A DNA stretch of 63,872 bases, filler included, from Olpidium bornovanus S191 (taxonomy: Eukaryota; Fungi; Olpidiomycota): the NCBI GenBank assembly GCA_017911155.1. It is 30 parts of 30 records of this genome, joined end to end, with 100 filler letters (N's around TTAATTAATTAA, not from the genome) between each part and the next. Parts side by side here need not be neighbours in the genome. Positions count along the whole stretch, not along the records: positions 11,334 to 13,713 come from JAEFCI010006023.1; 29 more parts are not named here. One strand, given 5' to 3'. The notes under the pieces were generated by a model. It was given only the letters and a program-made list of their open reading frames with translations, ran no database searches and was not told the DNA's origin. A program made the translations under genes and the position numbers. Positions 11,793-13,813 of this stretch are shown here, piece by piece (position 1 is the first letter of the stretch; each line of letters begins with the position of its first letter).

Positions 11793-13030
11793 TTAGACCA
11801 AAGAGGAGTTGGCCAATCGCGCGTCCTGGTCGGCATCTGTCACGTCCTCGGGGATTTCCGTGTGATCATCTCCCCCAGGCTCAGAGTGCCTGAGGTTACC
11901 ATCATTACTCGAAAGCTCAGAGCACCTTGAACCAGATGCCGGCCTGAATCCCCTTGTCATGACAAACAACCAAAACCGCTGCGGGATGGCATGCGCTATC
12001 GTCAGGCGCCCCTCATGGTTTTCCGGAAAGTCCATGACGGCGGTGCCGTGATGCTCTCGATTGGCGAAGAAGAAGAGCATGTTGTCTTCCAAAGCGAAAT
12101 AGACGCCGCGCGTCGGAAAGATGAACTTGCCGACGGTAATGCTCGGTGCCTCCATGCAGTATGCAAGGCACAGGTGGTTGGTGTCGTTATCAATGTGCAT
12201 GCGTGGCTGCAAAAGAAGTATGCAAGCGGTAGTAGAGCGATATACCGGCCACCGGGCCCAAGACCCATTTAAATATGAAAAAGATTTTCTACCTGGTTAT
12301 TGTGAGCCGCGCACATTGGCGGCGGCGCATTAGGAAATGCCCAGTGGAGTTTGGCCAACTCGTCACTTAGGCACAAGCCGTGCGCCTCCACATAGGCGAG
12401 GAACTCACGCACGGGCCCGTGCTGTGCCGCACAGTTTGCCCGCATGACCAACCCCTCAGGCTCTTTACGAAGGGCGGGCTTGGCGAGGAATTGATGGAGC
12501 TCCCGCACCCCGCGAGGGCTTGCCAAGCCGAACCCTGCCATTTTCCCGCTGGTGATGTGCTGCCGGCAAGCGCTCTGACTCACCTCCAGCTGCGAGGCGA
12601 GGAGGACCCAACAACGGCAAAACCAGCGGTTGGAGGTTGATGTTGCTGCAAAGTTGTGGCGAAAGCCCCTGACCACAGCCATCGTCGCCTCCTCAAAGAT
12701 CTAACACTCGCGGATGCGGCGCCCTGGGTCGAGGTTTTTCAGGCCTTCCAGAGAGACGCACTCAGCTGACGGCGGGGTGCTGGACAAGCTCAAGATGAAT
12801 TTCCCCAGGCATCGAGAACGAAGAGCTGCATTGTGCAAAAGGACAAAACATACTGGAGTCCCTCGCCGACGCGTAACGGGTGCCTTCGGGCACCCAGGTT
12901 TTGCCCATGACCCCAGGCCCCGCACACCCTTGGAAAACGAACTGCACAATGGCCCAGCAGGGCGCCATGCCTTGCCCAGACAGGGGGATCAGGCGGCCAC
13001 CAGACAGACGCCTCAGCCCAAGCTTGCAAC
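11793..13030 (-). pseudogene. TET/JBP-family 2OG-Fe(II) dioxygenase; catalytic half intact, N-terminal half with a frameshift and a stop
   Basis: Motifs: SGKMAGFG, HxD (MHIDND, 12197-12189), [26 protein letters not shown] (distal His at ~12050) and NHEGRLTIA (Arg at ~12008). A probable phase-0 intron at 12207-12292 (CAG|GTAGAA...TTGCAG|CCA) joins ORFs 12269-12682 and 11793-12212. In-frame TAG at 12701-12703; frameshift at ~12803. Confidence 0.78.
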
Positions 13031-13813
13031 CATTCACGGTCGGCGAGGAGGACCTTGAGAGCCCCGAGCAGCGTGACGCCCTCTTAGACTTGAAAGAGGA
13101 TCTGCGCGTGCGACATGTTTAAAAATTAGCTTCCCTGCCGAAGGCAAATCGGGCTCTGGGGATGCGAGTTGGCCACGACGGCCCATGCCCCCTTCCAACG
13201 AAGCTCGCAGACCATACCTGTGCTGTGGCACGGCCCTCAATCCCGACCGTCGCCCAACGCCAAGGAGGAAGCCACGGAAGGCGGCGGCGGGCGGGAGGCG
13301 GAGGCGGAGGAAAGACGGCCCAGGGGCCCGGGGCCCGACCAATAGAATAGTCCCACCCAGAGCCCGCCAATAGAAGAGCCCCCCCCCCCCTCCCACAATA
13401 ACGCCACATGCGGGAATCCACCGCCAACCACATTCCCCCCCTTGGTAAAGAGACTGCCCCCGCGCGCAACTGCGCGCGAGCTTGGAGACCCTCGTGGGGA
13501 CCACGACCGCGAGGGAAAGCAACCGCGTCGGCGGACGCGAGATCAAGGAACGACTCGGACGACGTCCTGCCCCGCCGCTCAAACTCGACGGGCATGAATA
13601 GCCCGTCCCGCTCCGTAGCCTCGTCCCCTCACCAACTCGAACTTAACCGTACTCGTAACCCTCGTCACCTCACCTGTCGTCTTTCGCGCAGACCTGACGA
13701 GGAGAATATAATANNNNNNNNNNNNNNNNNNNNNNNNNNNNNNNNNNNNNNNNNNNNTTAATTAATTAANNNNNNNNNNNNNNNNNNNNNNNNNNNNNNN
13801 NNNNNNNNNNNNN

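What the first reader, a model, noticed from the sequence alone, without database searches (positions are those of the whole stretch)
11793..12682. The dioxygenase has a TET-like rather than AlkB-like catalytic signature
Seen: HxD in MHIDND, then [22 protein letters not shown] and NHEGRLTIA. Established (recalled from memory): human TET2 has [24 protein letters not shown]...NHPTRISLV, with H1881 and R1896. The [16 protein letters not shown] match, the His-to-Arg spacing (14 versus 15 residues) and the upstream GKMAGFG strand fit the TET/JBP clade. All four predicted Fe/2OG ligands are intact in this copy. Inference: the ancestral product oxidised modified pyrimidines in DNA or RNA. The substrate is unknown; early-diverging fungi differ widely in their 5mC and 6mA content.
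Basis: partly seen in the sequence, partly recalled or inferred. Interest (0 to 1): 0.75.

Follow-up and report, generated by a model that had tools for sequence, protein, structure and literature searches.

The report
TET-like dioxygenase carried by a retrotransposon

Summary
On the minus strand, 12682-12293 and 12206-11796 are two exons separated by an 86-nt GT..AG intron. They encode MHIDND, ..ANREHHGT, ..GRLT and GKMAGFG exactly as quoted.

The TET-like reading is supported by consistent sub-threshold matches:
- The only Pfam families hit by this protein and its 13 relatives are Tet_JBP (6 of 14) and Tet-like PF20515 (8 of 14, best E 6e-5). No AlkB or prolyl-hydroxylase model matched.
- The only solved structure found by two profiles (one without any Olpidium sequence) is CMD1, the Chlamydomonas TET homologue.
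- The distal His and the Arg align to CMD1 H397 and R410.

Contigs from three public runs lack this intron and two upstream ones, so the gene is expressed. Against a paralogue dN/dS is about 0.1.

The family is tiny: 13 relatives among 1.8 billion representatives. Four copies (this window and three contigs of the Olpidium bornovanus assembly) and five metagenomic lineages converge on the SH3-chromodomain end of a Ty3/gypsy pol. One pol reading frame is open for 903 aa.

This copy is decaying. Its pol is frameshifted, and an in-frame TAG lies seven codons before the Met. No LTRs were seen, and the substrate and co-substrate are untested.

The parts
11796..12206 (-). Last coding exon (137 codons; stop TAA at 11795-11793). 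It holds HxD (12197-12189), the [22 protein letters not shown] strand pair with the distal His (12050-12048), the Arg of GRLT (12008-12006), and an acidic tail.
   Evidence: ORF list; coordinates; family alignment; Pfam Tet_JBP E 0.03-0.09; CMD1 alignments.
12207..12292 (-). Intron 3: 86 nt, GTAGAA..TTGCAG, phase 0, immediately before the codons for PRMHID. The same site is used in paralogues L001 and L003 and in the distant relative L008.
   Evidence: Sequence. The joint 12206|12293 is present in contigs of runs X1, X2 and X3. L001; L008.
12293..12779 (-). Exon 3. The Met is at 12682-12680, and the open frame of 267 codons runs from there to the stop. An in-frame TAG lies at 12703-12701, seven codons upstream. 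GKMAGFG is at 12547-12527. An Arg invariant in the family (RAN) is at 12442-12440.
   Evidence: The TAG is unchanged in the transcripts and reads TGG in paralogue L002.
12780..12853 (-). Intron 2: 74 nt, GTATGT..CCAG. An alternative acceptor gives 88 nt (12766). The intron is retained in one run.
   Evidence: Joints 12779|12854 (X1) and 12765|12854 (X3); unspliced in X2; ends. With the window sequence as it stands, the 74-nt form joins the frame that resembles relatives' N-termini to exon 3.
12854..13101 (-). Exon 2. It weakly resembles the N-terminal region of longer relatives (L008 residues 66-124). The frame is uncertain because transcripts and paralogue L002 carry one extra base after 12909.
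   Evidence: tblastn; the insertion is seen in three runs and in L002; frame bookkeeping.
13102..13217 (-). Intron 1: 116 nt, GTATGG..CGCAG.
   Evidence: Joint 13101|13218 in X1 and X3; ends.
13218..13304 (-). First exon seen in transcripts (5' end not defined). The stretch 13219-13291 is deeper than the gene and is joined to several different sequences in other contigs.
   Evidence: tables 2, 7 and 8. Similarity to paralogue L002 stops exactly at 13218.
11517..11792 (-). 3' untranslated region running antisense through the pol remnant, with two further GT..AG introns (11786-11712 and 11677-11596).
   Evidence: One 209-nt contig of run X1, depth 3; ends. Supported by a single contig only.
11654..11791 (+). 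Chromodomain remnant of a Ty3/gypsy pol. Its stop lies 1 nt from the dioxygenase stop on the other strand.
   Evidence: Pfam Chromo E 2.3e-6; ORF list.
11334..11633 (+). Integrase C-terminal / Tf2-type SH3 remnant of the same pol. It is broken by stops and by a frameshift relative to the chromodomain.
   Evidence: SH3_Tf2-1 E 0.017; three-frame translations.

Best explanation
The piece holds a four-exon minus-strand gene for an Fe(II)-dependent dioxygenase of the TET/JBP superfamily. It belongs to a small, previously unnamed subfamily whose nearest solved relative is the algal TET homologue CMD1.

The gene is cargo of a Ty3/gypsy chromovirus. It lies just past the chromodomain end of pol, on the opposite strand. 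Its introns are therefore antisense in the element's genomic RNA and would survive reverse transcription.

Inferred mechanism: H-x-D and the distal His bind iron. The Arg 14 residues later holds the distal carboxylate of 2-oxoglutarate. The enzyme oxidises a 5-methylpyrimidine in DNA, most likely 5-methylcytosine, which would relieve methylation-based silencing of the element. This is the role proposed for TET genes of fungal DNA transposons.

Shown here: gene structure, transcription and splicing, conservation of the ligands, purifying selection between subfamilies, family assignment at profile level, and linkage to pol. Inferred only: activity, substrate, co-substrate, benefit to the element, and position inside the LTRs.

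This particular copy is a decaying one. Its pol is frameshifted, a TAG lies just upstream of the Met, and it diverges evenly from its nearest paralogue.
For: Family assignment:
- Only Tet_JBP and PF20515 are hit, in 6 and 8 of 14 members, with best E 9e-4 and 6e-5.
- CMD1 is the sole PDB hit of profile A3 (E 0.0034), of profile A6, which contains no Olpidium sequence (E 0.013), and the top hit of P0013 alone.
- The distal His aligns to CMD1 H397 and the Arg to R410 (residue roles from PMC7854593).
- Language-model and shape look-alikes are led by Tet_JBP- or PF20515-labelled or Basidiomycota clusters.

Real gene:
- Three GT..AG introns are removed in contigs of three runs.
- dN/dS is about 0.1 against L001, with saturated dS and unalignable introns.

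Linkage to pol:
- The gene is tail-to-tail with SH3_Tf2-1 plus Chromo ORFs in the window and in L001, L002, L003, L004/L005, L010, L011, L012 and L013. The arrangement ranges from a 180-nt gap to a 149-nt overlap.
- L004 has an uninterrupted 903-aa pol frame that reaches the contig end: RVT_1, RNase H, integrase, SH3 and Chromo.
Against: - No single sequence reaches Pfam's gathering score (12.5-13.9 bits against 34.9 for the window exon).
- The N-terminal half gives no profile or PDB hit.
- The N-half model is unusable (pLDDT 46).
- No LTR, primer-binding site or target duplication was seen. All contigs are 0.6-4.4 kb, and similarity to L002 simply ends at 13218 and 11468.
- The runs are only guessed to be RNA.
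- In this copy an in-frame TAG interrupts sequence that is coding in relatives. Identity to L002 is flat at 82-87% across exons, introns and pol.
Confidence: 0.7

Rival explanations
1. It is a TET/JBP relative, but its chemistry is not canonical 5mC oxidation. It could be a CMD1-like enzyme that uses ascorbate to add a glyceryl group to 5mC, or a thymine or 6mA oxidase.
For: CMD1 is the closest solved protein in three searches. CMD1 Trp358, which blocks 2OG binding (PMC7854593), aligns with a family position that is Trp in 7 of 11 members. Kojima 2025 also leaves the chemistry of divergent transposon TETs open.
Against: In the window and the other Olpidium copies that position is Tyr, Phe, Cys or Val, not Trp. 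The Arg equivalent to the 2OG ligand is kept in most members. Whether it points into the pocket cannot be read from sequence.
Confidence: 0.2
2. The dioxygenase is not part of the retrotransposon. It could be a host gene or the cargo of a DNA transposon that repeatedly lies beside chromovirus remnants.
For: No LTRs were found. The two most distant relatives lie beside a hAT and a Harbinger-type transposase, as in the published fungal cases. The first exon of the window's transcript lies in a separate repeat.
Against: Nine lineages, differing by up to about 65% in protein sequence, keep the same stop-to-stop junction with pol. One of them has a 903-aa uninterrupted pol frame. Chance adjacency or nested insertion would not preserve a junction at this precision while synonymous sites saturate.
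Confidence: 0.12
3. It belongs to another 2OG-oxygenase family (AlkB, prolyl hydroxylase, JmjC), and the TET resemblance is a convergent motif.
For: The HxD..H..R pattern and its spacing occur across the superfamily. Fold searches with the half-domain list cupins, a P4H and other 2OG-FeII_Oxy families at similar scores.
Against: No AlkB, P4H or JmjC Pfam model is hit at E up to 10 by any of 14 members, while the TET models are hit by 6 and 8 of them. The PDB profile search finds no such protein.
Confidence: 0.05
4. This copy makes no functional enzyme. It is a transcribed pseudogene, and only other copies are active. This is compatible with the main explanation for the family.
For: A TAG lies at 12703-12701 inside sequence homologous to relatives' coding region. 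It is unchanged in transcripts. There is a 1-nt difference at 12909. The pol is frameshifted. Divergence from L002 is even across exons and introns. Two introns downstream of the stop could mark the mRNA for decay.
Against: The 267-codon frame from Met 12682 keeps every catalytic residue. A paralogue (P0004) is annotated from the same Met. dN/dS against L002 is 0.3-0.4, not 1.
Confidence: 0.5

Closest known systems
CMD1 (5-methylcytosine-modifying enzyme 1) of Chlamydomonas reinhardtii, PDB 7cy4
   Same: It is the only solved protein found by the family profiles. They share GGEFVLP..G..F.P..HGT and an Arg 13-14 residues after the His. The HxD-to-His distances are 52 and 49 residues.
   Different: About 30% identity over 50 residues only. 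CMD1 is a host gene that uses ascorbate. The window has Tyr where CMD1 has the 2OG-blocking Trp358. No N-terminal similarity was detected.
Transposon-encoded TET/JBP dioxygenases of fungi (Iyer 2014, cited from memory because the paper is not held; Kojima 2025, PMC12730594)
   Same: A TET-like gene carried as cargo by a mobile element and present in multiple copies per genome. [quoted passage not shown] The two most distant relatives of this family lie beside hAT and Harbinger transposases, as published for the PU type.
   Different: [quoted passage not shown] Here the carrier is a Ty3/gypsy chromovirus, the gene is antisense and spliced, and the host appears to be Olpidium, an early-diverging fungus.
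Pfam PF12851 Tet_JBP and PF20515 2OG-FeII_Oxy_6 (Tet-like)
   Same: These are the only oxygenase models matched. The matches cover the C-terminal strands with the distal His and the Arg.
   Different: All scores are below the gathering cut-offs. The N-terminal half is unmatched.
Retrotransposons that acquired epigenetic enzymes (DNMT or adenine methyltransferase domains; bioRxiv 10.64898/2026.05.21.726589)
   Same: A chromovirus-type element carrying a DNA-modification enzyme next to its chromodomain.
   Different: Those enzymes are fused in frame to pol. This one is a separate antisense gene with its own introns, and it is an eraser rather than a writer.

Membership tests
TET/JBP dioxygenases | H-x-D ... 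H iron-binding triad | tested here: met
   H 12197-12195, D 12191-12189 and H 12050-12048. They are conserved in most of the 14 relatives. The distal His aligns to CMD1 H397.
TET/JBP dioxygenases | Arg 10-15 residues after the distal His that binds the 2OG C5-carboxylate (TET2 R1896, NgTET1 R289) | tested here: met
   The Arg of GRLT is 14 residues after the His. Its column aligns to CMD1 R410 through P0013. The equivalence of R410, R1896 and R289 comes from PMC7854593.
TET/JBP dioxygenases | Significant match to the family profile (PF12851 or PF20515) | tested here: inconclusive
   The window exon scores 12.5-13.9 bits, E 0.03-0.09, against a cut-off of 34.9. Relatives match in 8/14 and 6/14 cases, with best E 6e-5 and 9e-4, and no competing oxygenase family. 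Exons were searched apart; the joined protein was not searched.
TET/JBP dioxygenases | Double-stranded beta-helix fold closest to solved TET structures | tested here: inconclusive
TET/JBP dioxygenases | N-terminal Arg that binds the 2OG C1-carboxylate and stacks on the flipped base (TET2 R1261, CMD1 R244) | tested here: inconclusive
   An invariant Arg (RAN, 12442-12440) exists in all six N-terminal halves. No alignment to a known TET covers it.
TET/JBP dioxygenases | Oxidation of 5-methylpyrimidines in nucleic acid | not testable with these tools
   This needs an enzyme assay.
AlkB-like dioxygenases | Match to AlkB-type profiles or solved AlkB/ALKBH/FTO proteins | tested here: not met
   None at E up to 10 in Pfam for 14 members, nor in PDB profile searches.
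Ty3/gypsy chromovirus (the carrier) | pol with RT, RNase H, integrase, SH3 and a C-terminal chromodomain | tested here: met
   The full domain order is present in L004. SH3 plus Chromo are present in the window, L001, L005 and L010-L013.
Ty3/gypsy chromovirus (the carrier) | Long terminal repeats enclosing the cargo gene | tested here: inconclusive
   No long direct repeats were found in the window, L002 or L003. The contigs are too short to hold both LTRs.
Fungal TET-positive DNA transposons (Kojima types PU, AG, PE) | Cargo of a DDE or Helitron DNA transposon | tested here: not met
   The window and eight other lineages adjoin a retrotransposon pol. Only L006 (DDE_Tnp_4) and L007 (hAT) adjoin transposases.

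The most novel reading that the evidence does not exclude
A lineage of Ty3/gypsy chromoviruses, in Olpidium and in unidentified intron-bearing (presumably eukaryotic) organisms seen in metagenomes, carries its own TET-like DNA demethylase as a spliced antisense gene behind pol. This would be the first retrotransposon-borne TET/JBP. It would extend transposon-encoded anti-silencing beyond DNA transposons and beyond Dikarya. The enzyme might share CMD1's unusual co-substrate chemistry.
Probability: 0.6. Interest if true: 0.75.

Novelty: new variant of a known kind. Interest (0 to 1): 0.62.

Why it matters
TET genes carried by fungal DNA transposons are thought to let the elements escape cytosine-methylation silencing. 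The most recent survey read here stresses that no retrotransposon does this, and it offers copy number as the reason.

A chromovirus lineage that keeps a TET-like gene under purifying selection would overturn that generalisation. It would also show how an intron-bearing gene can ride in a retroelement, namely by lying antisense. And it would point to 5mC-type marks mattering in an early-diverging fungal lineage whose epigenome is essentially unstudied.

It also defines a compact, very rare TET subfamily close to CMD1. That subfamily could help map which residues decide between 2OG and ascorbate use.

Tried and rejected
- NCBIfam scan of both exons: nothing.
- phmmer of the exon against PDB: only chance lectin hits.
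- Word-index protein searches: exon 3 found nothing, and the long N-terminal ORF of L008 found nothing.
- Two metagenome scans with family alignments: no confirmed locus. The first attempt failed for lack of a conserved stretch.
- PHROGs scan: uninformative.
- Foldseek and VIA searches with the 88-aa model: generic cupins only.
- AF2 of the N-terminal half: pLDDT 46, not searched further.
- P0008, a 797-aa repeat protein in the big search, was set aside as a low-complexity artefact.
- A 28-nt 'intron' that I first proposed to explain the frame change near 12850 was rejected. The runs show a 74-nt intron instead.
- My first exon coordinates were off by three bases and were corrected.
- Iyer et al. 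2014 is not held in the library.
Frames of the joined forms were only counted in a local script.

Full report
**What is in the sequence**

The piece (11334-13713) carries a minus-strand gene. They are exons joined by an 86-nt, phase-0 intron, GTAGAA..TTGCAG, at 12292-12207. The spliced frame from Met 12682 is 267 codons.

All quoted strings are present. MHIDND has its H at 12197-12195 and its D at 12191-12189. [22 protein letters not shown] has the conserved His at 12050-12048, which is the second H; a paralogue reads EEPHGT. NHEGRLTIA has its Arg at 12008-12006. GKMAGFG is at 12547-12527.

**Is the gene real?**

Contigs of three public runs from one study, 99% or more identical to the window, lack exactly 12207-12292. 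They also lack two further GT..AG introns upstream. These are 12780-12853, with an alternative acceptor at 12766 and retained in one run, and 13102-13217. One low-depth contig adds two introns in the 3' UTR.

The runs are only guessed to be RNA. Alternative and retained introns at canonical sites are what transcripts show, so I take the gene to be transcribed and spliced.

A word search found one relative, a hypothetical protein of Olpidium bornovanus. Its contig L001 holds both exons with the same intron site. Between the two copies, third codon positions carry most of the changes. Synonymous sites are saturated, dN/dS is about 0.1, and the introns cannot be aligned. The protein has therefore been under purifying selection.

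**Which family?**

Exon by exon, Pfam gives only a weak Tet_JBP hit (E 0.087, 12.5 bits). The paralogue gives weak hits to Tet_JBP and to PF20515, 'Tet-like 2OG-Fe(II) oxygenase'.

An exhaustive HMMER search with a two-sequence profile found only 13 true relatives among 1.8 billion representatives. Three are from the Olpidium assembly and the rest are from metagenomes.

- Scanned one by one, 8 of 14 members hit PF20515 (best E 6e-5) and 6 of 14 hit Tet_JBP (best E 9e-4). No AlkB, prolyl-hydroxylase or JmjC model appears at E up to 10.
- A profile of the 14 finds one solved protein, CMD1, the Chlamydomonas TET homologue (E 0.0034).
- A profile built without any Olpidium sequence finds the same protein (E 0.013). 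So does P0013 alone.
- From those alignments, the distal His corresponds to CMD1 H397. The Arg column corresponds to R410, which the CMD1 structure paper equates with TET2 R1896 and NgTET1 R289.
- Look-alike searches by language-model features and by shape also lead with Tet_JBP- or PF20515-labelled clusters.

The limits are plain:

- All scores are below curated cut-offs.
- The N-terminal half matches nothing.
- The 88-residue model (pLDDT 71) looks like any cupin.
- The N-half model failed.

**Surroundings**

On the plus strand, 11334-11791 is the decayed end of a Ty3/gypsy pol. It comprises a Tf2-type SH3 remnant and a chromodomain (E 2.3e-6), separated by a frameshift and stops. Its stop lies one base from the dioxygenase stop.

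The same convergent junction is found in L001, L002 and L003 of Olpidium. It is also found in five metagenomic lineages: L004/L005, L010, L011, L012 and L013. The arrangement ranges from a 180-nt gap to a 149-nt overlap.

In L004 the pol frame is open for 903 aa up to the contig end. It carries RT, RNase H, integrase, SH3 and chromodomain, and it overlaps the dioxygenase stop by 4 nt. These lineages share only 31-74% identity with the window in the catalytic core. The linkage is therefore old and conserved, which is what cargo of the element would show.

Only the two most distant relatives sit beside DNA transposases instead: Harbinger-type in L006 and hAT in L007. They form their own clade.

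An antisense position explains how introns persist in a retroelement. They are not introns in the element's own RNA.

No LTR was seen. The contigs are short, and repeat searches found nothing.

**State of this copy**

Relatives are longer. L008 has a 335-aa N-terminal ORF before the conserved intron. Similarity to it runs upstream of Met 12682, across an in-frame TAG at 12703-12701 and, through intron 2, into exon 2. That TAG reads TGG in L002 and is unchanged in the transcripts. The transcripts and L002 also carry one more base after 12909 than the window does.

Against L002, identity is 82-87% alike in exons, introns and the pol remnant. dN/dS is 0.3-0.4, and L002 has lost the Asp of HxD. 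So this is a decaying, still transcribed copy. Its catalytic reading frame happens to be whole, and it might still make the 267-aa product that a paralogue is annotated with.

**Comparison with what is known**

TET/JBP genes are known cargo of fungal DNA transposons. Kojima (2025) lists 11 such lineages in rusts, mushrooms and Pezizomycetes and names CMD1, CcTET, NgTET and TET2 as their nearest solved relatives. [quoted passage not shown] Other library searches found no report of a retrotransposon that carries a TET gene. One preprint's introduction does mention 'TET demethylases' loosely among domains acquired by 'several retroelements'. Its cited reference could not be checked here.

The enzyme itself is thus a new, divergent member of a known superfamily. 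Its carrier, orientation and host lineage make it a new variant of the transposon-TET theme.

**Mechanism**

I commit to an Fe(II)/2OG-dependent oxidation of 5mC in DNA that counters silencing of the element. I put about 0.45 on that chemistry, given membership. The main alternative is CMD1-like or other base chemistry. CMD1's 2OG-blocking Trp358 aligns with a position that is Trp in most relatives but Tyr here.

CpG-context transitions between the window and L002 are twice as frequent as at other C/G sites. That is a weak hint that cytosine methylation acts on these repeats.

Noticed in passing
window 13219-13291: This stretch has two to three times the contig depth of the gene. In several contigs it is joined at 13218/13219 to at least four unrelated sequences. 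Similarity to paralogue L002 also stops exactly at 13218. It could be a first exon shared by many copies or the edge of another repeat such as an LTR (the plus strand starts TG at 13219).
   Followed up: partly
window 13339-13386: Two CCAATAGAA-type direct repeats 28 nt apart lie just upstream (on the gene's strand) of the first transcribed exon. They may be promoter CCAAT boxes.
   Followed up: no
window 12909/12910: All three runs and paralogue L002 carry one extra base here relative to the window. This is either an assembly error or a polymorphism, and it changes the reading frame of exon 2.
   Followed up: partly
window 11596-11786: Two GT..AG introns lie downstream of the stop codon, antisense to the chromodomain. 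They are supported by a single low-depth contig. The first donor is 6 nt after the stop.
   Followed up: no
L006 3896-5308 and L007 3553-5109: The most distant relatives of the dioxygenase lie tail-to-tail with a DDE_Tnp_4 (Harbinger-type) and a hAT transposase. This resembles the published rust-fungus 'PU-type' TET transposons. The organisms are unknown.
   Followed up: partly
L002 3118-3247 and 1213-1380: There is a 65-nt tandem duplication (97% identical) inside the pol remnant. A 45-nt repeat pair also straddles the point where similarity to the window ends.
   Followed up: no
L009 1224-1923: In this relative the junction (..CNYQPKTHQD..) appears to be read without the otherwise conserved intron. 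A frameshift separates the two halves. This may be an intron-less, decayed copy.
   Followed up: no
window 13408-13713: Separate, deeper contigs of runs X1 and X2 cover this G+C-rich end of the piece without linking to the dioxygenase transcript. It may be a neighbouring transcription unit.
   Followed up: no
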